A stretch of 64,000 bases of DNA from Heteronotia binoei (taxonomy: Eukaryota), in assembly GCF_032191835.1 (NCBI RefSeq), contig NC_083232.1, forward strand, positions 52,824,001-52,888,000, written 5' to 3'. The translations under genes and the position numbers were made by a program. Below, piece after piece: positions 7,545-64,000 of this stretch. The first letter of the stretch is position 1. Each line of letters begins with the position of its first letter. Under the pieces are notes generated by a model. The model had not been told where the DNA came from and did not search any database. It saw only the letters and a program-made list of their open reading frames with translations.

Positions 7545-7770
7545 GAGGAAGAAAACTGCAGATTGATACCCCGCCCTTCTCTCTGAATCAGAGACTCAGA
7601 GTGGTTTACAATCTCCTATATCTTCTCCCCCCACAACAGACACCCTGTGAGGTGGGTGGGGCGGAGAGGGCTCTCACAGCAGCTGTCCTTTCAAGGACAA
7701 CTCCTGCGACAGCTCTGGCTAACCCAGATAAGAGTCCACACACTTTACCACTACACCAAACTGGCTTTGA
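7545..7770 (-). mobile_element. Squam3 (gecko-type) SINE with internal deletion
   Basis: Same sequence as 35461/40751/58576 but lacking about 60 bp after the tRNA-related head. Confidence 0.85.
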
Positions 7771-35275: not shown

Positions 35276-35736
35276 GAGGAGGAGGAGATTGGATTTATAC
35301 ACTGCCCTTTGCTTGGAGTCTCAGAGTGGCTTTCAATTGTTTTGCTTTCCTCTCCCCACAACAGACACCCTGTGAGGTAGGTGGGGCTGAGAGAGCTCTG
35401 AGAGAACTGCTCTTGAGAGAAAAACTGACCCAAGTACACCCAGCAGTTGCACGTGGAACAAGAAGAAGACTGCAGATTTATACCCCTCCCTTCTCCCTGA
35501 ATCAGAGACTCAGAGCGGCTTACAATCTCCTATATCTTCTCCCCCCACAACAGACACCCTGTCAGATGGGTGGGGCTGAGAGGCTCTCATAGCAGCTGCC
35601 CTTTCAAGGACAACTCCTGCGAGAGCTATGGCTGACCCAAGGCCATTCCAGCAGGCAAGTAGAGGAGTGGGGAATCAAACCCGGTTCTCCCAGATAAGAG
35701 TCTACCTCTCTTAACTACTACACAAAACTGGCTCTC
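35276..35736 (-). mobile_element. Two tandem Squam3 SINE copies (one truncated, one full)
   Basis: Repeated ctcccccacaacagacaccctgt..ggtggggctgagag core; full copy at about 35461-35736. Confidence 0.88.
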
Positions 35737-37140
35737 TGAACTGAAGAAGTCTGCTTATGTGCAAAAACTTATATCTTAAATTATTTTAGTCTTAAAAGTG
35801 CCACTGGACTCAAACTTTACTCTTTGGTAGTGTTCTCTAAGCATTCAGGGTTACATTCAATATGGAGTTTCCATTAGCTGTTATGGTCTAATAGCCACTG
35901 ATTATGCCTATTTGTTTTCCCCATGAATTGCTTGGCATTCATGATTGCAACCTAGACCTAGATACCCTTCCTAAACTGTGATATTAGCTTCTATTATTGT
36001 GCCCTGAAGGGACTAAATCAATGTGCTTGGACTGCCATAGTTTGCATAAAATTGCAGTGTTAGGCTTCAGGAGCTGCTGCCACCTCATTTTTATAAAAGT
36101 TAACTAAACAGTCAACAACCAATTGATGGAATTAGATTCATCCAAACATATCTTTGCTATCTTTCAATTAATACCAGCGGTTGTAATTGAAACAGTATGA
36201 ATATACTTCAACAGATTGAAAGGGAAACTGTTTTTCAAAAGGTCTTGCCAGATTTTGATCTTCACCAACTTAGTATATGCCATTCTCAATTGCTTTGCCT
36301 TAATATAATGTTTTCATGTTTCATTTCCCACTATTATAAGGAAGAAAGTTTTGCCTAGTCCCCCTCCTTTTGCCCCCCAGTACTGTTTCTGAGGGTTATT
36401 AAACAGACATGTTTGCAGCTATGCTGATCCGAAATGAAAATCCAAAGCCGAACTATAATTGGTACTGTGTCTTTCATTAGGACCAACCAAAATGACACAA
36501 AGCAATGTGCAAGCTTTTGAGTTCCCCAGAACTCTTTGTTAGGAAGGATGTTACAAACTTTTTAAAAGTAGTGGTGGGAGAGAGAAAAAGATTTCTCAGG
36601 ATTGCATGCTGCATTGTGTCATTCAATCATGATTTTAAGGACCAACAAAGCATTGTTCTGGTTTCCAAGTCACTCTGTCATCCAGAACAGCAATTCAGGC
36701 TGCAATGGGAGGGGGAAAGCAGTACAGCAGCTCCTTTAGCATATTCCCACTGCTTCCTATGCTAAAGGAGCTGCTGGCTAAGATCCTACACCCAGCTTAA
36801 AGGAATGTCCCTCAATATATGTAGTTACCCACCCAAATGGGTATAAAGGGTCTCTAGACAAAACAACAAGGCATTTCTACAAACCTTGTGTTCACACTAT
36901 TTGTGGACATTTTGTTAGTCATATGTTAATAGTGATTGTGTATGATGTTATTTTCAACTATTTTTGCCTGTTAAGCTTTAGTAACCTCTTTACCTCCCCA
37001 ATAGTCTGCTACATACCTGACTCCAAACCATCTACCTAATGGAACAGTATATCCTCCATAATCTCATAGCTGAATCTAGAAACAAGAGAGTAGTGGTTCA
37101 TTTCATTGAAGATATAACAGACAAACTATATTGTCCTATG

Positions 37141-39190: not shown

Positions 39191-40750
39191 ATGCTTGATT
39201 AGGTTCTTATTAGGTAGCAAAATTGGTACAGGTTGCTGTTAAGTAGGAAAGGAACAATCAACAAATACTATGAGGCATTTAACGATAATGGGAGCTCACC
39301 TTGCCCTGCTGCTTATGGGCTGTTATGGCTAGAGAGTGAGGGGGGAGAGGCTGCTTTGGTGCTAGGGAACACCAACTGGTGCTTAGCTGCTGAACAGTAT
39401 GAGGAGAAGCAGGTGAAGAGTAGTACCTTTTGGCACAGGGTTCTATGCAGGCAATGAAAGACTAAACTGGGCAGCTTTGGCTGAGATGAGTTAAGCCAGG
39501 AAGAATTACTCATGTGCAGGCAGTTTGTACAGGCTGGCCTGCTGTGGGAGAGGGGCAGTAATAGCTTAATTATTAACAAGATCCTGCACAGATCCATCTT
39601 TAATAAAACCTAGTTGATTCATATCTGTGCCTCATATCTTCATTTTAGAACATGGGGCAATGACAACTATTCCCATTAACAACACTTTAACAAGATATTC
39701 CCCAAAGGCAAAAAGTGGGGCGGGGCATAGAACAGAGAAAGGTGTCTTCCAGGCAAAAGTGCTGGTCTGTTTTTTTCCTTGCCTTAAGTCACAAGTTGAT
39801 TGTTCAGCTCAGCACTGTAGGTTTTTATGTGGAATTTCCCTATGTGTGTCTTATTATCCTTTTCAGACGTGTTCATTTTCAAGCATTTTTGTTGTTGTTT
39901 TTGTTGGCACATAAAAACAGCAATGCAGTACACATGTGTGAATTAACTAAAATAAAAGTTTACTAAGATATTAGAGAAGGTTACATGGAGGAATAAAATA
40001 GCTGAATGAGTGACATTCTTCTATTTAATGTTAAGCACCAAGATGGAAACTTGCATCTGCTCTTAGAACAAAGAAAGGAAGAAGGAAACCCAAAAATGCC
40101 TACTGACAAAACTCAGGCAACATTTCCCAGTTACAAGCTTACTAATGATCAGGCTAAAGGTTAGTTCATTATGCATAGGATCTTCCCCTTCTAACGTGGG
40201 AACTTCTGCTCGATGCCCCATAGGTCCTACCTATCTGATGAACAATTAGCATAGACAAACACAGGTTAACACTTTCATGGCATCAAGGAGAGAACTTTTA
40301 AACATTCCAACAGTTTTACATATGTGCTGTTTTGCTGTTGTGAGGGTGTCCACCACTGAATATAGTCTGCTGCCATATGCACTTACTCACCCCCAAAACT
40401 CTTGTTTGCATGTCTGGCCTTTCATTGGTTTGCTGCTTTCCCACATTTGACTCTGTTTCATTGGTTCTGTGGCAAGTTCTCACTGGGACAATTCACTTAG
40501 CATGAGAGGGAGCAGCAAAACACAGCTGACTCTCTCAGCCCCCCATGTGCTTTTGCAAGTGTATCCCCTTCCACACCAGTATGCCCTGATGAGCAACATC
40601 GGGGGGGGGGGAGCAGTGCACTCCAAAGTAAATGATAAGGTAGGTGGAGCAATAGGACAGGAATTAATATAGGCAGGTAAACAAACGAAAGGAAGGCATT
40701 TCAGGAGAGGGGGGGAGATCAGGAGAAAACAGGTTTCATAAAGAGCACAG

Positions 40751-41010
40751 AGAGCCAGTTTGGTGTAGTGGTTAAGTGCTTGGACTCTTATCTGGGAGAA
40801 CTGGGTCTGGTTCCCCACTCTTCCACTTGCACCTGCTGGGATGGCCTTGGGTCAGCCATAGCTCTCGCAGAGGTTGTCCTTAAAAGGGCAGCTTCTGTGA
40901 GTGAGTGTTATGGGGGAGGAAGGTAAAGGAGATTGTGAGCTGCTCTGAGACTCTGAGATTTGGAGTGAAGGTCGGGATATAAATCCAACATCTTCTTCTT
41001 CATCTTCTTT
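40751..41010 (+). mobile_element. Squam3 (gecko-type) SINE, full length
   Basis: gagccagtttggtgtagtggttaag head, CORE-like body, L2-like 3' end and (tct)n tail. Confidence 0.9.
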
Positions 41011-41233
41011 GGGGGGAAAAAAGGAGAAAAGCCATGTCAGCAAGGGGTATGCAATGGAGCTGGAAAGAAGCATTTAAAAAAAAAGCAATGAAAGGAAACA
41101 AAGCAGAGCAATCTAGATTTTCTTATTATGAGGAAAGACTAAATAGTTTTTAGTTTAGAAAATGAATGGAGATGCTTAAGAGCAACAAGCTTTTTCTCCC
41201 TCTCCCAAAAGACAAGAACCCAGGGGCTTCCAC

Positions 41234-42004
41234 CAGACCTGTAGCCACGGGGAGCACAGCCCCTCCATTCAACCTCCCTTGTGGCCCCTCCATTGGGTGG
41301 GGCCCCACTTCCCTATGTAGGACCCCTCCATTGGAGGGCCTCTATGACCCGTGGGAAAGGGTGGGCAGCCAGAGGGAGCAGTAGAAGGGTGAGAGGCCGT
41401 ACAGGAGCCCCGGCAGGGCTTCCAACGGCCTCTTGGCAGGGAAGGGTGGCAGGGGGTCATGGGGGGTTGAGCGTCTCTCTCCAGGAGCCTTCATGCCCCA
41501 GAGGAACGGGTAGCATGAAGGGGTAGAGAGGGGAGGCGGCCACCGCCGCGGGTTACAAAGGGGTTACTATATGAGTGAGTAGGAGAGGGCAGGCGGGGGG
41601 AGAAGGCGCGGGTAGCCCGATGGGGCAGACCAGAGCAGGGTCCTCTCTGCAGCTAGCATTGTGGGGCGTTGCTGCTGCTGGTTGGCAGGCTGGAAAGGCC
41701 AGCTCAAGATGCTCTTGATGGCAAAGGAGCTGCTGAATTTAGAGCCGGAAGGTGGGGCGGACGATGAGGAGGGTTTCTGGCAGTAGTCAGGGGTTTCTGG
41801 TCGGTGCCGGAGCGCAGCGAGGCCAGGGCAGCAGCGGGAACCGGGGGTGGTTGGGCCTGGTTGGGCAGCATGCAGTGCTGGGGGGGCTCCAGAATCCTTG
41901 ACGGCCAGCAGCATGCCCCTTTTTCTCCCCCCCTTTGGCGCCCCCCTCACTCGAACTTTTATCGCTTGGGCCCCTCCATCCAAGATTTTCTGGCTACTGC
42001 CCTG
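41234..42004. mobile_element. Non-autonomous hAT element (Pack-hAT) carrying a FOXQ1 fragment, inserted in an old CR1
   Basis: 8-bp TSD gcttccac/acttccac (41226-41233, 42005-42012; 7/8). TIRs cagacctgtagccac and revcomp cagggcagtagccag (11/15). The flanking CR1 sequence rejoins across the insertion. Confidence 0.8.
41300..41925 (-). pseudogene. FOXQ1: Decayed fragment of FOXQ1 C-terminal (post-forkhead) coding region
   Basis: KFSSSFAIKSILSWPF at 41693-41740 (FOXQ1 eh1-like KFSSSFAIDSIL..PF). PFYCSLWLP at 41363-41389 (FOXQ1 LYCPLRLP), followed by GPH..PME. Contains stops and frameshifts; no forkhead domain. Confidence 0.8.
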
Positions 42005-42180
42005 ACTTCCACTGAAGTTGATTTAGGACAGATGAAAAGAAATCGTTACTCAACAAATGAAAAATTGTGGAATTCACTGCCAGTGGACATTGTGATAAGT
42101 ATAGATGGCTATAGAATTAGTGGATTAGACAGATTAATGCAAGATGGGCCTATCAATGATGAGTAAAGGGAACTTCCAAG

Positions 42181-42353
42181 CAGGACTGGATCTACATTTT
42201 GGGGGGTGGGATTAAAAATGATGCCCCCTTATGGGCCCACTCTATCTTATGGGTCCATAGAATAGAATGAACTCCCTACCCAATTTGGCACACACCCCCT
42301 CTGGTGGCACCCAGGTTAAGCACCCCCTCTGCTCCCCCCTAGATCTGGCCCTG
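42181..42353. mobile_element. hAT MITE
   Basis: Ends caggactggatcta/tagatctggccctg; degenerate TSD cttccaag/ctcccatg. Confidence 0.65.
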
Positions 42354-42689
42354 CTCCCATGCACAAATCTCTGAATACCCTGCTAGGAGGCTTTGAGAAC
42401 CTCTGGTTAACTGGTTGTGACTGTATGAAATGGTAAGCCTGAATGGACCACTGGCATGATTCAGCAGTGCTCTGTTCTTATTTAGAGGTATTAGGTTGTG
42501 GAGGCACATCTGCACTGGTTTTATAATGCTAAAACCCAATTCCCGCTTGTGAATCCCTCTGGTTGTATTCAAAAGTTCTTCTCTTTATAGTCTATCGTCC
42601 TGCCCCCTGACTTTTCCACCCTTTGGATCCAAGTAAGAAACCCCGGATTCTAGGAAAGTTAGAAGCTTTGACAGGCAGCTTTTAGTTAA

Positions 42690-50225: not shown

Positions 50226-50360
50226 NNNNNNNNNNNNNNNNNNNNNNNNNNNNNNNNNNNNNNNNNNNNNNNNNNNNNNNNNNNNNNNNNNNNNNNNNNN
50301 NNNNNNNNNNNNNNNNNNNNNNNNNNNNNNNNNNNNNNNNNNNNNNNNNNNNNNNNNNNN
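50226..50360. other. Assembly gap (135 N) in an ABCB5 intron
   Basis: Run of n. Exon phases on both sides join without needing a missing exon. Confidence 0.99.
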
Positions 50361-50781: not shown

Positions 50782-50929
50782 TTCAGTTTTGCAGACTCAC
50801 TAGATATTCTTTTAATGCTACTGGGCATCATCACAGCTGCAGCAGTTGGACTTGGGCAGCCTTCTGTTATCATTATTTTTGGACAGATCACAAACAGCTT
50901 TGTGGCAACTGGCCAAAATGTGTCTACAA
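50782..50929 (+). CDS. ABCB5: ABCB5 coding exon 4 (elbow helix, TM1)
   Basis: gatctag| ... |gtaagt. FSFADSLDILLMLLGIITAAAVGLGQPSVIIIFGQITNSFVATGQNVST. Confidence 0.95.
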
Positions 50930-51824
50930 GTAAGTCACTAAACTTACCAAAATAAGTTAAGAAAACTGGAAGATAACAGTTCAGATTTTTAGACAGAGGC
51001 TGAACAGCAAATTAGCATGTAACATGATTAAGATATTTTAAGATATGCAAGGATAAAACAAGAATAACCAGTTTATATGGTCAACAGTTGTTTGGATTTA
51101 TTTAAGAGGAAACAACAGTGAAGGAATATCTATGTCAAAATAGGAGATAAATGTGTAAAAGTATTTCTAATTGTGGGAAGTTTACTGAAACTTCGTTGCT
51201 CCTCCCCATTTGTCTCCTCTCAAGCATGGAGGTAACAAATAGAATTATTTTCTTTGTTGGGGTAGGGTGCAGTTCTATGACAGAGAGATGCATTTCAGTT
51301 TTCATTGCATTACTTTACAATCACCATACCAACATATAAAAGTTATCTGTGACTTGTGACAGTTTATATTGAAAAAAATGTTGTTAGGTTTTAAGTTGCT
51401 ACTGGACTTTTATTTTGCTACAAGATATTAACACTACAATAACTACTGTTGAATCTTTTTTCTTAAAGGAAAATATTAATTTGATTGAATAAAGGGCTGC
51501 TTTAGAGAAGGTTGCAAAACATGTGCAGAAGATTTCTCATTGGCAAATGATCAGCTGCTATGAAAGTTGTGTGTGATCTAGAAGTTCCAAACCCTACACA
51601 CTTAAACCTGTGGTTCTCTATTTTTTTCTCCCCAGAATTCTAAGTGGTGGCTTACATGCACTGATGTTTTTTTTATCTACATGGGGCCCAACTGTTGGCT
51701 GTTAGATATAGTGATGGTTTTTCTACAATTGCAGGACCATATAAAAATGCCATGTTGACATTGTGTTTGAAAACAGTTTGCAATACATTTTTCAACTATA
51801 CTCTTGCTACCATTTATTTTATAG

Positions 51825-51882: not shown

Positions 51883-52049
51883 GTAAGTTCCCATACAGTT
51901 ATTATTTTGAGAAGTTATAACTTTATCTTGCTATAAAGGCAAATTTTGTTTTTGTCTTTCAGTGTATGATTACAATCACACTCCTTTTTTCAGTATACTA
52001 ATGTGTTCAACAGAATGCTGCTTATTTTAGCTGTTAATGTCTTCATCAG

Positions 52050-52241
52050 GTTTGCTTACTACTATGTTGGACTTGGTTGTGGTGTGTTGCTCCTCAGCTC
52101 CATTCAGGTCTGGGCCTTTTTGACTAGTGCTGCAAGACAAACAGCAAGGATACGTGATAAATTCTTTTTTGCTGTTCTTCACCAAGAGATGGCCTGGTTT
52201 GATACCATCCGCATTGGAACACTGAATACCAGACTTACTGA
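52050..52241 (+). CDS. ABCB5: ABCB5 coding exon 6 (TM2, ICL1)
   Basis: 192-bp exon, as in ABCB1. FAYYYVGLGCGVLLLSSIQVWAFLTSAARQTARIRDKFFFAVLHQEMAWFDTIRIGTLNTRLT. Confidence 0.97.
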
Positions 52242-53083
52242 GTAAGAAATTTCTATTCTGCTGTTGGGGATGGGGTATGGAAGGAAGTAACTGTCTTCTG
52301 TCTGGAGGATACCTAGCCAGATTTTGTGGGTCTATCTGCCAAATCCAGCTAGAGACTTGGAACCACATAAAAGGTGATTGCCACTCCTGTATGTCTAAAT
52401 AGTTGGTGAGCTGCATGCATTGTATGTGCTCTTTTCCTTCCTGATCTGCTAGAGATATGCATGTGGATCACTTTTGAAGTGGTAAAAATTCTGCCAAAAG
52501 AAAACAGAAGGGCTGCATCAATTACAGAGATTTTAGAAAATAGGGTCACTGATGGACACACTGAATTCTTGAAGGTCTTATTTGTCTCATTAAGTTCAAC
52601 AGAAAGCAAACTTATGCATATGTTGCCAGAGTTCTCTTCTTTTATAAAGAAAACAGTTGTGGGCTATCTCTTGTTTATGAAATCTGCCATTGGGTCTCAT
52701 GTACTGGTTCTATGGGAATGCCATATTGTTTGGGAAATTGTGGATATAGGAAGGGTTTATGAACTATAGAAAGAGAAAATTTCTCCCGCAACATAGAAGA
52801 ATGCATGCATGGATTCTTCCTTTTATTAAAAAAAAAAAAGGAAAATATTCACGTGAGATGAGGGTACCCCTATGTATGCTTTAGACCTCCAGTATTCATA
52901 GGAAATAGCTAGGTTGAGGCACACATCTGTAATCTGCAATGGTAATTATTTGGGATTAGGCTGATTTGGTGAGGCATAGTTCCAATGTCACTCTAGGTTC
53001 AAATGCCTCAATTTGTCTTTTTTTTTAACAATAACCAAAGTCATGGTGTCACCCAAATGATCCATATGCATATGTAAGTCACC

Positions 53084-54741
53084 TAGGGTTGCCAAGTCCA
53101 ATTAAAGAAAAATCTGGGGACTTTGGGGGCGGAGCCAGGAAACATTGGGGTGGAGCCAGGAACAAGGATGTGACAAGTATAATTGAACTCCAAGGGAGTT
53201 CTGGCCATCACATTTAAAGGGACAGCACGCCTTTTTAAATGCCTTTCTTCCATAGGAAATAATTAAGAATAGGGGCACCATCTTTTGGGGCTCATAGAAT
53301 TGGACCTTCTGGTCCAATTGTTTTGAAACTTGGGGTGTATTTTGGGGAGAGGCACTAGATGCTATACTAAAAATCTGGTGCCTCTACCTCAAAAAATAGC
53401 CCCCCCCAGAGCCCCCAATACCCACGGATCAATTCCCTATTATTCCCTATGGGAATCGTTCTCCATAGGGAATAATAGAGTGCCTAGTAGACATTTCCCT
53501 CCCCTCCCCCCCGCTTTCTGACGACCCTGGGGATTGGCAACCCTAGGTCCACCAGCGGGGCCAGGATAACAGAGGCTGTGGAAGAGAGGGCCATCAGTAG
53601 CTGTGAGTTGACATGGGCAAATGGAACCTCTGTAGATAGAGAGAGAGTACCCGCTGGAACACCAAACACCACGAAACCTAAGAAAACACACAGAACATTG
53701 CAGCCTTATCGCATGGCCCTAGCTCAGTTTACTAAGTGGGACTTACTTGGGGAGGCGCTGGGTTGCCAGCTCCAGGTCGGGAAACCCCTGAAGCTTTGGA
53801 GGCAGAGCTTGTTAAGGACACAGACCAGGGGGGGGGGGATGCAAGCCATGCCCTCGAGGGCGCCCACCCTCCTCCAAAGCTGCCGTCTTTTCCCGGTGGG
53901 GGCGGGGCTCCCTGCAGCCAGGAGCTCCGTGGCCATTCCAGGAGCTCTCCAGGCCTCACTTGGAGAAAGGTAGCCCTCCCGAGCGGGCCCCTGGCTGCGG
54001 GGAGGGTGTCTCCCAGGCCCGGAAGGAAAGGAGGGAGGCCGAGGTGCTTTGCCTGCGGGCTCCCCAGAAAGGCAGGCACTTGCTGGAGGGCTGGCCGGGC
54101 TGCGGTCGGTGGCGCTGGGGCTGCCCGCCTCCTTCTCCTCGGGGCCGTGCGCAGGCAGGGCAGGGCAGAGAGGGCCATGGGGCAAGGGCAGCAGTGCAGG
54201 GCCCGCCTGGTGGGAGCCCCGCCGCCTTACCCTCCTTGACGCCGGGCAGCTTGGACTGGTTGATGCCGATTTCGGCCATGGCGGCGCCCGCAGCTCCTCA
54301 CCTGGCGTCGGGGCTCCTCCGGAGCAAGGAAGGCTGCAAGTGAGGCAGCCGCTGCCTGTGCCCCGTCGCCCTCCTCGTGAGCAAGACGCCGCTGCAGCCG
54401 CGCCAGCTTCCCTCCCTCCCTCCGGGGACAGCCGGCGCTCCACCACCAGGGCGCGGAAGAGCCCCCAGCCAGCCGGGCTGAGGTGGGAAGGAAGCTGCGT
54501 GGCCGCCACCCAAGAGAAAAGGACTCCAAGAGGGAGCGCTGAGCTCCAGCCCACCCCGCTGGCGCGGCGCGAGACCTTGGTCGGCAGCCAGAACCCAGCC
54601 AGAGGCCTGCTCGCCCTCGGCTTGGCTCGGGCAGGTGGGAAGGGCCGCCATTTCCCCCCCGCTTTCCAGATGTTTGGGGAGCGGGGGGAGGAGGCTCCAA
54701 ATCGGGGGTCCCCCGCCCAGGCGGGGGATTTGGGAACCCTA
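53084..54741. mobile_element. Composite non-autonomous hAT element (Pack-hAT) carrying a CCDC50 fragment
   Basis: Perfect 8-bp TSD AAGTCACC (53076-53083, 54742-54749). Outer TIRs tagggttgccaagtc and revcomp tagggttcccaaatc match 13/15. Contains a complete MITE (53084-53545), an older MITE (53759-53977) and GC-rich non-repeat cargo. Confidence 0.9.
54231..54279 (-). pseudogene. CCDC50: Captured first coding exon of CCDC50 (with 5' flank and intron 1)
   Basis: Minus strand gccgccATGG Kozak, then MAEIGINQSKLPGVKE+G|gtaagg (49 coding bp). Recalled human CCDC50 begins MAEVSIDQSKLPGVKE(V) with the same phase-1 intron. No downstream CCDC50 exons are seen. Confidence 0.85.
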
Positions 54742-56275: not shown

Positions 56276-56557
56276 GCTTCAGTAAATGTGATGAGATTCT
56301 CCAAAGAAAGATAATGTTCGTATAGTTATGTATTGTAAGAATAATTATTATGAAACCTGAAGAAAATGGGATGAAATACATTAGACTTGAGAGACTTATG
56401 AGACTAATTTTGTGTCCACATAAACCCCCCCCCCTACAATGGCACCTAGTTTTTTGGGTCACTGCGTGACAGAGTGTCGGACTGGATGGGCCACTAGCCT
56501 AATCCAACATAGCTTCTCTTATGTTCTTATCCATCATTTTTTCTCCTTTGATTGCAG

Positions 56558-56729
56558 TGATATTAATACGATTCAAGAAGGCATTGGAGACAAGATCAGT
56601 TTAATAGTCCAGTTTTCTTCGACTTTTGTGGCGGGGATTATCATAGGATTTGTGCATGGATGGAAGCTTACTCTTGTGATTTTAGCTGTTAGCCCTCTTA
56701 TTGCTGCATCTGGGGCTGTGTGGTCGTAT
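56558..56729 (+). CDS. ABCB5: ABCB5 coding exon 7 (TM3-TM4)
   Basis: 172-bp exon. DINTIQEGIGDKISLIVQFSSTFVAGIIIGFVHGWKLTLVILAVSPLIAASGAVWSY. Confidence 0.97.
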
Positions 56730-57105
56730 GTAAGTTGATGAAGCTACTAGTGATAATTCATTAAGTTACACCATTTAAATCCCATGTGCTGTGTTTTCTT
56801 TTAAGAGAAAGTAATATCATTTTTTAGCATATGCATTTTTAAAGAGAATGTTTAGCCAGTCATTTTACTAAAATCCATGTCATCACTTTTGGTATAGAAA
56901 GCTAATCAGGAGATGGTTACTTCTCTGCACAGAGAATTACATGTGCAGCCAAATTCATATGTGTGAAAATGGGGCTTATGCAGTGCTAGAATTAAGGCAT
57001 ATCACCAAAAGATGTTTCTGATTTCTTATCATACACAGTAACTTTATTCATATAAGGGGAATTAACAGTCTCTAAACTTTGGTGATTTTTCTTTACATTT
57101 TCTAG

Positions 57106-57900: not shown

Positions 57901-58159
57901 GTGGTTAGTAGTAACAAAGGCAGAAAGTAGTGTGGAGTGTACAGGTTGAGCATCTTGCAGCCTTCATCACAGGGAATGTTGTACTTTCCAGCACACTTGC
58001 TGCAAAAAAATGAATCTATATATTGAGCGGAGGGAACTAACATGTAATTCACACTGCTCAAAGATGTTGCATGATTGGGGAAGTGTTTATCAAACTGTAA
58101 TTGTGGAACCAAAAGTCAAAGCAAACATCTGAATTAGAACATTTTGGCTCTGTTTTTAG

Positions 58160-58337
58160 GTATGATGCAAACCTAGAAGAAGCTAAGATTGTTGGAATGA
58201 AAAAAGCCATCACCACCAATGCTTCTTTGGGTATCACCCAGTTTCTTATATATGCATGCTATGCACTTGCCTTTTGGTATGGAACTAAACTCGTACAGGA
58301 GGAGCCAAAGACATATGACATTGGGAAAGTGTTAATT
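58160..58337 (+). CDS. ABCB5: ABCB5 coding exon 9 (TM5)
   Basis: 178-bp exon, YDANLEEAKIVGMKKAITTNASLGITQFLIYACYALAFWYGTKLVQEEPKTYDIGKVLI. It is 2 aa longer than ABCB1 (YGTTLVLSGEYSIG), as in ABCB5 (YGTSLILNGEPGYTIG). With ITGB8 synteny this supports ABCB5. Confidence 0.95.
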
Positions 58338-58575
58338 GTAAGTTTAGTTGTTCTACTTAATGCAGACTTTAAAATATGGTCTTGGGACTCCAAACACAAG
58401 TAAAAGTTTCATTTGGATTGAAGGTTAGGGATCCAGCCTATATAAGCACTGCTCAGTTTTTTATGTACAACTGTTGGCTATTGAAATGGATATTCCTTAA
58501 AGAAAAGCATAGTTAAGTAAACCAGCAACTCCACACAGTTACAATGAAAAAGAGATGTGTGGAGGGAGTGGACAA

Positions 58576-58860
58576 GAAGAAGATAGAAGATGATATTGGA
58601 TTTATATCCCGCCCTCCACTCCGAAGAGTCTCAGAGCGGCTCACAGTCTCCTCTACCTTCCTCCCCCACAACAGACACCCTGTGAGGTGGGTGGGGCTGG
58701 AGAGGGCTCTCACAGCAGCTGCCCTTTCAAGGACAACCTCTGCCAGAGCTATGGCTGACCCAAGGCCATTCCAGCAGATGCAAGTGGAGGAGTGGGGAAT
58801 CAAACCCGGTTCTCCCAGATAAGAGTCCGCACACTTAACCACTACACCAAACTGGCTCTC
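58576..58860 (-). mobile_element. Squam3 (gecko-type) SINE, full length
   Basis: Close match to the 40751 copy in reverse complement. Confidence 0.9.
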
Positions 58861-58861
58861 T

Positions 58862-59245
58862 GACAGGGAAAAGCTTTTCTTCCTTTCCCCATAATACTAG
58901 AACCTGGGTCATCCACTGAAGCTGAATTGGAAAGTCAGGACAGACAAAAACAAGTACACAGCATAATATAGCTAATTTGTGGAACTCACTACCACAGGAT
59001 GTGGTCATGGCTGCCAACTTGGGAGACTTTAAAACAGGATTGGACAAATTCATTGAATCTATCAATGACTCCTAGTCTTAATGGATATCTACTTCCTCCA
59101 ATACCGGAGGCACTATGACTCTTTGTATCTGTTGTATCTAGGCAAGAGAATACTGTTGCAATTGTGAACTTGGGGCCCTCCGAACAAAAATTTTGGGTAT
59201 GGGGCTAGGTGGACCTTTGGTTTGATCCAGCATGGTGGTTTTGAT
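58862..59245 (+). mobile_element. CR1 3' fragment (others at 15662-15835 and 17790-17900, minus strand)
   Basis: ggacagacaaaaac..LWNSL..gatgtggtcatggct..ggattggacaaattcat..ggtttgatccagcatgg terminus. Confidence 0.75.
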
Positions 59246-62589: not shown

Positions 62590-64000
62590 ATAATTTATTA
62601 TATTGTAATAGCACATTATCATTTGTTATTAAAAATTAATACATATACATTACATTTTCTCCATCCCTCCCCTCTTTTGGTGACCCCCAGCAGTGCATTT
62701 TGTTAAAAAACTAATAAACTTTATCTATTAAATAATCTTACTTCATCAAAAAGAAAGAAGAAAGAAAAAACCATAGGTTATAATTGTAATCCATTTTCAT
62801 TGTAGTCCTTTAGTCATTAACAAAAAGGAAAAAAAATGAAAAAGATGTATTCTAATAATCACTTTTTTACTATAATCCATTTAAAGTTTCTTTAGAGATT
62901 AACCATTGTCAAAAATCGCCAAATACCCTTTAACGTTCCATTGTTTTTCAACATACTTTTGGAACTTTCCCCACTTATTTTTAAACTTCTCTAAATCTTG
63001 TTCTTTTAAGATTCTTGTAAGCTTGTCCATTTCACTCCAAAGCATAACTTTTAAAGTCCACTCCCACCTTTCTGGCATTTTGTCTTGTTTCCACATCTGC
63101 GCATATAATGTCTGTGCAGCTGAAAGCATATACCAAATTATCGTTCTATCTTGTTTTAAAAATGTTTCCATTTGTAATCCCAACAGAAAAATGTCTGGTG
63201 CCTTCTTAATATTATATCCCAAAATTTTTCGAAATCTCTTGCTGAATCATTTGCCAAAATTGTTTTGCCTTTCCACAAGTCCACCACATATGGTAGAAAG
63301 ATCCTTCTTGGTTTTTATATTTCCAACATCTATCCGACACCTGATTGTTCATTTTTGCCAATTTTTGAAGTGTCATGTACCACCTATATAACATCTTAAA
63401 GCAATTTTCCTTAATTTTATAACATGTAGATACTTTCATAGAGTTCTTTCATAATTGTTCCCATGACTCCATCTGTATTTCTTTATTTATATTTATCGCC
63501 CATTCTATCATTTGTGATTTAACTACTTCATTTTCCGTAGACCATTTCAATAATAGTTTATATATCTTTGAAATCAGCTTTTCATTTTCCCCAAACAGCA
63601 TTCTCTCCAGTTCTGTTTGTTCTTGTCTTATTCCATAGTTCTTAATGTTCTGTTCAAGCAAACTCTTTATTTGTTGCAATTTAAACCAATTATATTTATA
63701 CTGTACTTCCTCAGCCAATTTTAATTCCACCTTTCCTCCTTGAATTTTTAAAAGCTGTTTATATGATAACCACTATTCTTCTTTGATATCTGACTGCAGT
63801 TTTATTACTTCTGTTGGCACAATCCAAAGCGGTTTCCTCTCATCTCCATATCTTTTATATTTTGTCCAAGTATTTAACAGATTACTTCTTATATAATGAT
63901 GCGAGAAGAAGCCGTCCATCTTATTTTTCCCATAATACATAATACATGCCATCCAAAAACATTTCCATGACCTTCTAATGCTAGTAATTTTCTATTTAAT
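62590..64000 (-). mobile_element. L1-clade LINE, 3' part of ORF2 and 3' UTR (disrupted)
   Basis: Frameshifted ORFs with a lizard-L1 C-terminus (LYRWYMT..CWK..EGSFYHMWWTC..FW; LSAA..LYAQ.WK). Confidence 0.88.

What the first reader, a model, noticed from the sequence alone, without database searches (positions are those of the whole stretch)
41234..42004. Second hAT element carrying a FOXQ1 coding fragment just upstream of the ABCB5 promoter
Seen in sequence: a 771-bp insertion splits an old CR1, with an 8-bp TSD (gcttccac/acttccac) and degenerate TIRs. Its GC-rich interior translates on the minus strand to KFSSSFAIKSILSWPF and PFYCSLWLP...GPH..PME. Established knowledge: these match the FOXQ1 eh1-like motif (KFSSSFAIDSIL) and its conserved C-terminal YCPLRLP segment, and FOXQ1 lies in the FOXQ1-FOXF2-FOXC1 cluster, not here. 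The fragment lacks the forkhead domain and has stops and frameshifts, so it is older than the CCDC50 capture. It uses a different TIR family, so the capture was independent.
Basis: partly seen in the sequence, partly recalled or inferred. Interest (0 to 1): 0.85.

Follow-up and report, generated by a model that had tools for sequence, protein, structure and literature searches.

The report
Decayed FOXQ1 fragment inside hAT-like transposon
A 771-base mobile-element insertion in a gecko genome carries a dead half-kilobase copy of the back half of the FOXQ1 gene; it is a real but ordinary example of a transposon picking up host gene DNA, a thing already catalogued in animals.

Summary
The block 41234-42004 is an insertion into a CR1-like LINE tail. 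A second copy of that LINE in the window reads straight across the joined flanks and carries the 8-mer only once, so the 7/8 target-site duplication is real. The ends form a 14-nt inverted repeat (11/14, P about 1e-4).

The core, 41363-41878 on the minus strand, is FOXQ1 coding DNA (blastn E 1e-81 to 1e-97 against gekkonid FOXQ1). It covers codons 182-359 of 378, from just after the forkhead domain to the YCPLRLP segment. It is sister to Heteronotia binoei FOXQ1 (96/96 support), 79.7% identical, with 6 frameshifting indels, a stop codon and heavy CpG decay.

Homology stops 57-60 nt before the stop codon, and that peptide lies in a repeated motif of the left arm.

The two arms (129 and 126 bp) are unrelated to FOXQ1. 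The best reading is a Pack-type, hAT-like non-autonomous element, now inert. I could not test whether the cargo was acquired at this site or before transposition, how many copies exist, or where the ABCB promoter lies. The same scan holds dozens of unchecked notes of similar captures elsewhere in this genome. This is a new member of a known kind, of modest interest.

The parts
41140..41225 (+). Left part of the host CR1-like LINE 3' region that was split by the insertion
   Evidence: It aligns collinearly with the paralogous copy at 58861-59140 up to the insertion point. The CR1 class itself is from my recall of the ORF2 C-terminal WNSLP-type motif and was not tool-tested.
41226..41233 (.). 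Left copy of the 8-bp target-site duplication (gcttccac)
   Evidence: the paralogous CR1 copy has this 8-mer only once.
41234..41247 (+). Left terminal inverted repeat, CAGACCTGTAGCCA
   Evidence: 11/14 complementary to the right end, P about 1e-4 at fixed ends.
41234..41362 (.). Left arm (129 bp), not FOXQ1. It holds three copies of the subterminal motif GCCCCTCCATT, at 41259-41272, 41284-41297 and 41322-41335
   Evidence: It shows no similarity to the FOXQ1 CDS end or to 600 nt of 3'UTR in three geckos (z between -0.7 and -0.1). CCCCTCCAT occurs 7 times in the window, 4 of them in this element, against 0.5 expected. CpG o/e is 0.16, equal to background.
41363..41878 (-). FOXQ1 coding fragment, corresponding to Heteronotia codons 182-359 of 378. 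Sense is on the minus strand. It is decayed.
   Evidence: - phmmer best hits are Gekko japonicus and Sceloporus FOXQ1.
- blastn gives 73-75% identity and E 1e-81 to 1e-97 against four gekkonid FOXQ1 loci.
- It is 79.7% identical to Heteronotia over 493 nt, with 32 of 100 mismatches CpG>TpG/CpA, 6 frameshifting indels and a stop at codon 298.
- It is sister to Heteronotia in the tree, with 96/96 support.
- The upper breakpoint is only resolved to about 41855-41878.
41702..41725 (-). Relic of the FOXQ1 eh1 (Groucho-binding) motif, FAIKSILS
   Evidence: One search gives the coordinates. Vertebrate FoxQ1 eh1 is FAIDSILS/R according to PMC1939712.
41879..42004 (.). Right arm (126 bp), not FOXQ1, with one copy of the subterminal motif at 41970-41983
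   Evidence: It shows no significant similarity to the first 560 nt of the FOXQ1 CDS (z between -0.8 and 0.5). CpG o/e is 0.38.
41991..42004 (-). Right terminal inverted repeat; its reverse complement reads CAGGGCAGTAGCCA
42005..42012 (.). Right copy of the target-site duplication (acttccac)
42013..42180 (+). Right part of the split CR1-like LINE 3' region. It continues after a second small insertion at 42181-42356.

Best explanation
This is the relic of a Pack-type chimeric DNA transposon. Two short arms of a non-autonomous, hAT-like element (129 and 126 bp, 14-nt imperfect TIRs, repeated subterminal motif, 8-bp TSD) enclose about 516 bp copied as DNA from the single coding exon of FOXQ1.

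**Shown**
- The insertion and its TSD.
- The inverted ends.
- The FOXQ1 origin of the core and its breakpoints: just after the forkhead domain, and 57-60 nt before the stop codon.
- Its source in the Heteronotia lineage of gekkonids.
- Its decay.

**Inferred**
- The host piece entered the element by template switching while a double-strand gap in the element was being repaired. This is the abortive gap-repair or gap-filling route described for Ds-type elements and for animal Pack-TIRs.
- My split on where that happened: about 55% that it happened to an element already sitting at this site, and about 45% that it happened elsewhere and the chimera then transposed here.
- It has no function now. 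It lacks the DNA-binding domain, has no intact frame, has lost about 60% of its CpGs, and is decaying as methylated neutral DNA, probably over tens of millions of years.
For: - **Insertion.** It is precise to the base when compared with a paralogous CR1 copy.
- **TIR.** 11/14, P about 1e-4.
- **Superfamily traits.** An 8-bp TSD and short TIRs are the hAT hallmarks (PMC3942097).
- **Subterminal motif.** Four copies within the element.
- **Core is FOXQ1.**
- **Sharp homology ends with unrelated arms.**
- **Different histories of arms and core.** The arms are CpG-depleted like background (o/e 0.16 and 0.38 against 0.19), while the core is half-decayed from a CpG-island parent (0.92 to 0.49). This fits old TE arms plus imported island DNA.
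- **Source lineage.** The tree places the cargo with Heteronotia FOXQ1 at 96/96 support.
- **Precedent.** 370 Pack-TIRs were found in 100 animal genomes, 208 of them hAT, with exons over-represented among the cargo (PMC8277862).
Against: - No second copy of either arm was found in the 64-kb window or in about 50 kb of gecko FOXQ1 loci. That sample is far too small to settle the point.
- There is no transposase partner, and I had no TE library.
- The left end CAGAC misses the YARNG terminal motif at position 5.
- The TSD does not fit the nTnnnnAn or nnnTAnnn target preferences (these are from my recall).
- The TIR is only 14 nt and imperfect.
- No sequencing run was listed, so I could not test copy number, empty sites or expression.
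Confidence: 0.75

Rival explanations
1. It is a transposed member of an amplified family. The FOXQ1-bearing chimera formed once elsewhere and then multiplied, so this is one of several copies that share the same arm/cargo junctions but have different TSDs.
For: - The element has intact-looking ends with a TSD.
- Multicopy Pack-hAT families exist in frog and alligator (PMC8277862).
- Pairwise decay of the TSD plus TIR (4/22) is about what the non-CpG decay of the cargo predicts, so insertion and capture may be of similar age (very small numbers).
Against: - Only 1.4% of animal Pack-TIRs were multicopy in PMC8277862.
- No second copy of the cargo or arms turned up in the window.
- No similar called ORF was found in 5.8 billion proteins other than genuine FOXQ1. 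This is weak evidence, because such ORFs are rarely called.
Confidence: 0.15
2. It is not a transposon at all. The 771 bp is filler DNA or a patchwork of ectopic fragments (FOXQ1 plus two unknown GC-rich pieces) pasted into a chromosome break in the CR1 by end joining, and the apparent TSD and TIR are by-products.
For: - The arms have no identified family.
- The TIR is short and imperfect.
- Both arms are GC-rich like the cargo.
Against: - End-joining insertions do not make an 8-bp duplication of the target, and the duplication is shown by the paralogous CR1 copy.
- The CAG...CTG inverted ends have P about 1e-4.
- The motif repeated four times near the ends is typical of transposase-binding subterminal repeats.
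- The arms are CpG-depleted, unlike the cargo.
Confidence: 0.08
3. It is a processed retrocopy: a FOXQ1 mRNA fragment reverse-transcribed and inserted by LINE machinery.
For: FOXQ1 is intronless, so the absence of introns is uninformative. The insertion does have a TSD.
Against: - The copy lacks the 3' end of the message. It stops 57-60 nt before the stop codon and has no 3'UTR and no A-run.
- Retrocopies keep the 3' end and lose the 5' end.
- Unrelated arms with inverted termini sit at both ends.
Confidence: 0.01
4. The captured piece has been co-opted. It could act as a GC-rich regulatory element of the neighbouring ABCB gene, or as a source of RNA or peptide carrying the eh1 motif that acts on FOXQ1 or on Groucho/TLE.
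For: - It lies upstream of an ABCB1/4/5-type gene, next to a weakly CpG-enriched zone.
- A stop-free 151-codon stretch still spans the eh1 relic.
- Some animal Pack-TIRs are transcribed as chimeric UTRs (PMC8277862).
Against: - There are six frameshifting indels and a stop codon, and that stretch has no ATG start.
- A third of all substitutions are CpG deamination, as expected for methylated neutral DNA.
- The 20% divergence plus indels rules out RNA-level targeting of FOXQ1.
- Divergent transcription from a downstream promoter would give sense, not antisense, FOXQ1 RNA.
- There was no Rfam match.
- No expression data could be obtained.
Confidence: 0.03

Closest known systems
Animal Pack-TIRs, especially Pack-hAT (Tan et al. 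2021, Nat Commun 12:4280, PMC8277862)
   Same: Host, non-TE DNA is enclosed by the two ends of a TIR transposon with a TSD. hAT is the commonest carrier, exonic DNA is over-represented in the cargo, and the cargo runs to a few hundred bp.
   Different: - That catalogue was limited to young cases whose flanks match a consensus TE. Its main text does not mention lizards or geckos.
- This case is old (about 20% diverged), its carrier family is unidentified, and its cargo (516 bp) is about twice the 224-bp cargo size the paper reports.
- Copy number and route of origin were not tested here.
Plant Pack-MULEs (rice)
   Same: A non-autonomous TIR element carries a fragment of a host gene. A preference for GC-rich gene parts is reported for Pack-MULEs (recall; PMC5861414 listed but not read). 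Here the cargo comes from a CpG-island-like exon (parent GC 0.74, CpG o/e 0.92).
   Different: The superfamily differs: Mutator has long TIRs and 9-10 bp TSDs, whereas this element has a 14-nt TIR and an 8-bp TSD. There is no evidence here of amplification or expression.
Ds-type internally rearranged hAT elements with filler DNA (abortive gap repair; from recall)
   Same: Two short, roughly equal terminal arms are retained, and the internal part is replaced by foreign DNA.
   Different: The autonomous partner and the progenitor element are unknown here, so the junction microhomology that defines that mechanism could not be examined.
FOXQ1 gene
   Same: The core is homologous to codons 182-359, including the eh1 motif and the YCPLRLP segment. 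It is closest to Heteronotia binoei FOXQ1.
   Different: It has no forkhead domain, no N-terminus, no last 19 codons and no intact frame, and it is at a different locus. It is a gene fragment, not a paralogue.

Membership tests
hAT superfamily (non-autonomous element) | 8-bp target-site duplication | tested here: met
   gcttccac and acttccac match 7/8. The 8-mer is single in the paralogous CR1 copy. The feature is as stated in PMC3942097.
hAT superfamily (non-autonomous element) | Short terminal inverted repeats (10-25 bp) | tested here: met
   A 14-nt TIR with 11/14 matches and P about 1e-4. There is no extension beyond 14 nt.
hAT superfamily (non-autonomous element) | Terminal YARNG motif (from recall: Kempken and Windhofer) | tested here: inconclusive
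   The right end CAGGG fits. The left end CAGAC fails at position 5. One decayed base would explain this.
hAT superfamily (non-autonomous element) | An autonomous partner encoding a hAT transposase with the same termini | not testable with these tools
   The termini pattern occurs nowhere else in the window. I had no access to the rest of the genome or to a TE library.
hAT superfamily (non-autonomous element) | Other family members sharing the arms or termini with different TSDs | tested here: inconclusive
   None was found in the 64-kb window or in seven FOXQ1 loci totalling about 57 kb. The sample is far too small.
Pack-TIR (sensu PMC8277862) | Internal non-TE sequence with an identifiable parental copy elsewhere | tested here: met
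   The core is FOXQ1 CDS (E down to 7e-97). No forkhead-domain match exists anywhere in the window.
Pack-TIR (sensu PMC8277862) | Both flanks of the cargo match one TIR-TE consensus | not testable with these tools
   No repeat library was available. The support is indirect: the TIR, the TSD, the shared subterminal motif and the CpG-poor arms.
FOXQ1 (functional gene or paralogue) | Forkhead (winged-helix) DNA-binding domain, PF00250 | tested here: not met
   Homology begins at codon about 182, after the domain. The right arm shows no similarity to CDS nt 1-560.
FOXQ1 (functional gene or paralogue) | C-terminal eh1 motif FAIDSIL(S/R) | tested here: met
   FAIKSILS at 41702-41725, with one substitution.
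FOXQ1 (functional gene or paralogue) | Intact open reading frame | tested here: not met
   Six frameshifting indels and a TAA at Heteronotia codon 298.
Processed retrocopy | Retains the mRNA 3' end with a poly(A) tract | tested here: not met
   Homology stops 57-60 nt before the stop codon, with no 3'UTR similarity and no A-run.

The most novel reading that the evidence does not exclude
This element may be one visible case of an unusually frequent, lineage-wide import of GC-rich or CpG-island gene pieces by non-autonomous DNA transposons in a gekkonid genome, a vertebrate counterpart of rice Pack-MULEs.

Within this 64-kb, 41.6%-GC window, the only two GC-rich islands (41.2-42.0 kb and 53.6-54.8 kb) both lie inside TSD/TIR-bounded insertions of different TIR families. 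First-stage readers have flagged some 36 further 'Pack-hAT' candidates elsewhere in the same genome, none of them checked.
Probability: 0.3. Interest if true: 0.65.

Novelty: new member of a known kind. Interest (0 to 1): 0.35.

Why it matters
On its own this is a neutral fossil. It shows that a hAT-like element in a gekkonid lineage took up half of a transcription-factor coding exon as DNA, and it gives a dated, breakpoint-resolved example from squamates. The main text of the published animal Pack-TIR survey does not mention squamates.

Its wider value depends on whether such captures are truly common in this genome. If they are, geckos would offer a vertebrate system for studying why DNA transposons preferentially pick up GC-rich exon and CpG-island DNA. 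They would also allow a test of whether the cargo arrives by in-situ gap filling or by transposition.

The finding also has a practical side. Such fragments can mislead gene prediction and CpG-island or promoter calling near real genes, here an ABCB transporter gene.

Tried and rejected
- **Sequencing runs.** I searched twice for public runs holding this DNA (the element alone, then 10 kb with ABCB exons). None was listed. The read-laying test for empty sites, other copies and expression could therefore not be run.
- **Other arm copies.** I looked for other copies of the arms and of the neighbouring 176-bp element in the window and in the fetched gecko loci and found none. The sample is uninformative.
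- **Protein word search.** A search with the 151-residue stop-free piece found only Gekko japonicus FOXQ1-like.
- **Earlier scan notes by sequence.** The search was blank, which means nothing according to the operators.
- **Extent of FOXQ1 homology.** I tested whether it extends into the arms, either into the forkhead-coding DNA or into the last 20 codons and 3'UTR. It does not; scores equal those of shuffles.
- **Apparent MAFFT alignment.** An alignment of the right arm to forkhead-coding DNA is a forced alignment, rejected.
- **Retrocopy reading.** Rejected because the 3' end is missing.
- **Rfam scan of 40.5-43.6 kb.** Nothing was found.
- **Chance hit.** The phmmer hit P0002, a WD40 protein of 1406 aa, is a low-complexity chance match.

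Full report
**1. What is in the sequence**

The block 41234-42004 is GC-rich: 0.60-0.65 across its parts, against 0.416 for the whole window. It is flanked by gcttccac (41226-41233) and acttccac (42005-12).

I removed the block together with one copy of the 8-mer. The joined flanks then align collinearly with a second copy of the same LINE tail at 58861-59140. That copy reads ...gggtcatccactgaagct..., so it holds the 8-mer once. The block is therefore an insertion into a pre-existing repeat, and the 8-bp duplication was made by that insertion.

I call the host repeat CR1-like from its WNSLP-type ORF2 tail. That label comes from recall and was not tool-tested.

The first and last 14 nt are inverted repeats, CAGACCTGTAGCCA against CAGGGCAGTAGCCA, matching 11/14. 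With the ends fixed independently by the CR1 comparison, random 14-mer pairs reach 11/14 in only 1-2 per 10,000 trials.

The motif GCCCCTCCATT occurs three times within 100 nt of the left end and once 22 nt from the right end. Its 9-nt core occurs 7 times in the window, against 0.5 expected, and 4 of those are in this element.

**2. The cargo**

The minus strand contains KFSSSFAIKSILSWPF and PFYCSLWLP.

- A phmmer search of the 151-residue stop-free piece against 1.84 billion proteins gave two genuine hits: Gekko japonicus 'forkhead box protein Q1-like' (E 2.8e-15) and Sceloporus undulatus FOXQ1 (E 2.1e-9). The Sceloporus protein has a Pfam Forkhead domain at residues 94-179.
- A third hit is a low-complexity match to a WD40 protein.
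- The published vertebrate FoxQ1 eh1 motif is FAIDSILS/R (PMC1939712). The copy has FAIKSILS.

I fetched the FOXQ1 loci of seven squamates. blastn against the first five (the geckos) gave:

| Species | Identity | E-value |
|---|---|---|
| Heteronotia | 73-75% with gaps | 7e-97 |
| G. japonicus | 73-75% with gaps | 7e-91 |
| Paroedura | 73-75% with gaps | 4e-89 |
| G. kuhli | 73-75% with gaps | 6e-81 |
| Eublepharis | 66% | 1e-48 |

**3. Exact extent, and a correction**

In every species the homology stops sharply at window 41361-41363. That point corresponds to ...FYCPLRLP, 57-60 nt upstream of the FOXQ1 stop codon. At the other side it fades between 41855 and 41878, which is Heteronotia codon 182, the RRRKRL just after the forkhead domain.

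I ran local alignments of the remaining 126-127 nt at each end against the first 560 nt of the FOXQ1 CDS, and against the last 70 nt plus 600 nt of 3'UTR. They score no better than shuffles (z between -0.8 and +0.5).

The element is therefore two non-FOXQ1 arms of 129 and 126 bp around a 516-bp FOXQ1 core. It is not FOXQ1. A MAFFT alignment that seemed to pair the right arm with forkhead-coding DNA is a forced alignment.

**4. Source lineage and state of decay**

In a maximum-likelihood tree of the aligned region, the fragment is sister to Heteronotia binoei FOXQ1 with 96/96 support. Its branch length is 0.20, against 0.069 for the gene. Several shared derived bases are visible in the alignment. 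The copy was therefore made in the lineage leading to Heteronotia, after it separated from Gekko and Paroedura. The window's genome presumably belongs to that lineage.

Against Heteronotia the fragment shows:
- 79.7% identity over 493 aligned nt.
- 32 of 100 mismatches that are CpG>TpG/CpA in the copy.
- 10 indel events, 6 of them frameshifting.
- A TAA at codon 298.

CpG observed/expected values:

| Region | CpG o/e |
|---|---|
| Parent genes | about 0.9 (GC 0.72-0.80) |
| FOXQ1 core | 0.49 |
| Left arm | 0.16 |
| Right arm | 0.38 |
| Window background | 0.19 |

The arms look like long-methylated repeat DNA, and the core looks like imported CpG-island DNA half-way to equilibrium. A rough reading is an age of tens of millions of years. 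I have no calibrated rate, so this is inference.

**5. What it is**

The following features fit a non-autonomous hAT-type element:
- An 8-bp TSD and a short TIR beginning CAG. hAT elements have 8-bp TSDs and 10-25-bp TIRs (PMC3942097).
- Repeated subterminal motifs.
- Two short arms of near-equal length.

A host gene fragment between such arms is what Tan et al. (PMC8277862) call a Pack-TIR. They report 370 in 100 animal genomes, with hAT the commonest carrier (208) and exons over-represented in the cargo.

Membership in hAT is not proven here. The left end (CAGAC) misses YARNG by one base, no transposase partner is in the window, no repeat library was available, and no second family member was found in the small amount of sequence I could search.

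**6. How the cargo got there**

The mechanism is inferred: template switching during repair of a double-strand gap in the element. Tan et al. conclude that single-copy animal Pack-TIRs mostly arise this way in elements already in place, without transposition, and that only 1.4% are multicopy.

I cannot tell whether that happened at this site or before a transposition to it. I put it at roughly 55:45 in favour of in-situ. The TSD plus TIR decay (4 mismatches in 22 paired positions) is about what the cargo's non-CpG decay predicts. That is compatible with both routes and rests on very small numbers.

The other readings fare as follows:
- A retrocopy is excluded. The 3' end of the message is missing, there is no A-run, and there are inverted arms.
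- A transposon-free filler insertion is unlikely, given the TSD, the TIR and the motif repeats.
- Function is unlikely. There is no DNA-binding domain, the frame is broken, the substitutions follow a CpG-deamination pattern, and there is no Rfam match.
- Transcription running upstream from a downstream + strand promoter would produce sense, not antisense, FOXQ1 RNA.

**7. Context**

Downstream on the + strand are exons of an ABCB1/4/5-type full transporter:
- Pfam ABC_membrane hits at 51970-52242, 56424-56735 and 58101-58400.
- Best PDB relatives are ABCB1 and ABCB4, with E about 1e-19.
- The first recognisable exon (FSFADSLD...) is at 50782-50952.

ABCB5 itself could not be told apart from ABCB1/4. 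The promoter could not be located. Only a weak CpG enrichment at 42.5-43.5 kb (o/e 0.66-0.72 at GC 0.47) suggests one. 'Just upstream of the promoter' is thus unverified.

The other element in the window (53084-54741) has TAGGGTTGCCAA-type ends and a perfect AAGTCACC TSD. It is a different family and probably younger.

The only two GC-rich islands in the whole window are these two insertions.

**8. Earlier scan notes**

The same genome carries many unchecked first-reader notes of 'Pack-hAT' or 'Pack-TIR' captures on other pieces; 36 fitted my query. I used them only as a lead for the novel case. None was tested here apart from the ends of the 53-54 kb element.

**9. Verdict**

This is a new member of a known kind (animal Pack-TIR or Pack-hAT), old and inert. 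Interest is modest, 0.35. It would rise if a genome-wide census showed that such captures are unusually frequent in this lineage.

Noticed in passing
window 42181-42356: A 176-bp MITE-like insertion sits in the same CR1 tail. Its inverted ends are CAGGACTGGATCTA and ...TAGATCTGGCCCTG, and its flanking 8-mers cttccaag and ctcccatg match 6/8. Its ends loosely resemble those of the FOXQ1 element (CAGGGC..., GGGGAGCA at a similar offset). No other copy was found in the window or in the fetched loci.
   Followed up: partly
window 53084-54741: A second TSD/TIR-bounded GC-rich insertion. Its ends are TAGGGTTGCCAA and ...TTGGGAACCCTA, with a perfect 8-bp TSD AAGTCACC. A minus-strand ORF begins MAEIGINQSKLPGVKEG, which resembles the CCDC50 N-terminus by my recall only. 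CpG o/e is 0.49 over the whole element, rising to 0.65 in its GC-rich part.
   Followed up: partly
window, whole: The only stretches of 300 nt with GC of 0.56 or more in this 41.6%-GC window are 41.2-42.0 kb, 53.6-54.8 kb and a marginal one at 55.5-55.8 kb. The first two are both inside transposon-like insertions.
   Followed up: partly
window 40748-41009, also 58574-58862, 35460-35738, 7561-7766: A roughly 260-bp SINE-like repeat ending in a (ttc)n-type tail occurs at least four times in the window. It has copies of 70-86% identity in the FOXQ1 loci of Heteronotia, G. japonicus and Paroedura.
   Followed up: no
L001 10001-11087 (Gekko japonicus KQ753850.1): The annotated 222-aa 'forkhead box protein Q1-like' (XP_015274783.1) lacks a forkhead domain. 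The reason is that an assembly gap (L001 10172-10507) covers that part of the single exon and the model splices over it. This is an annotation artefact, not a truncated paralogue.
   Followed up: partly
window 50226-50360: A 135-base N run lies about 420 bp upstream of the first recognisable ABCB coding exon (50782-50952). Any short 5' exon there cannot be read. I left it untouched.
   Followed up: no
window 62900-63990, minus strand: Long stop-free stretches (about 70-115 aa each) that I read by eye as a LINE ORF2 C-terminal region. I ran no domain search on them.
   Followed up: no
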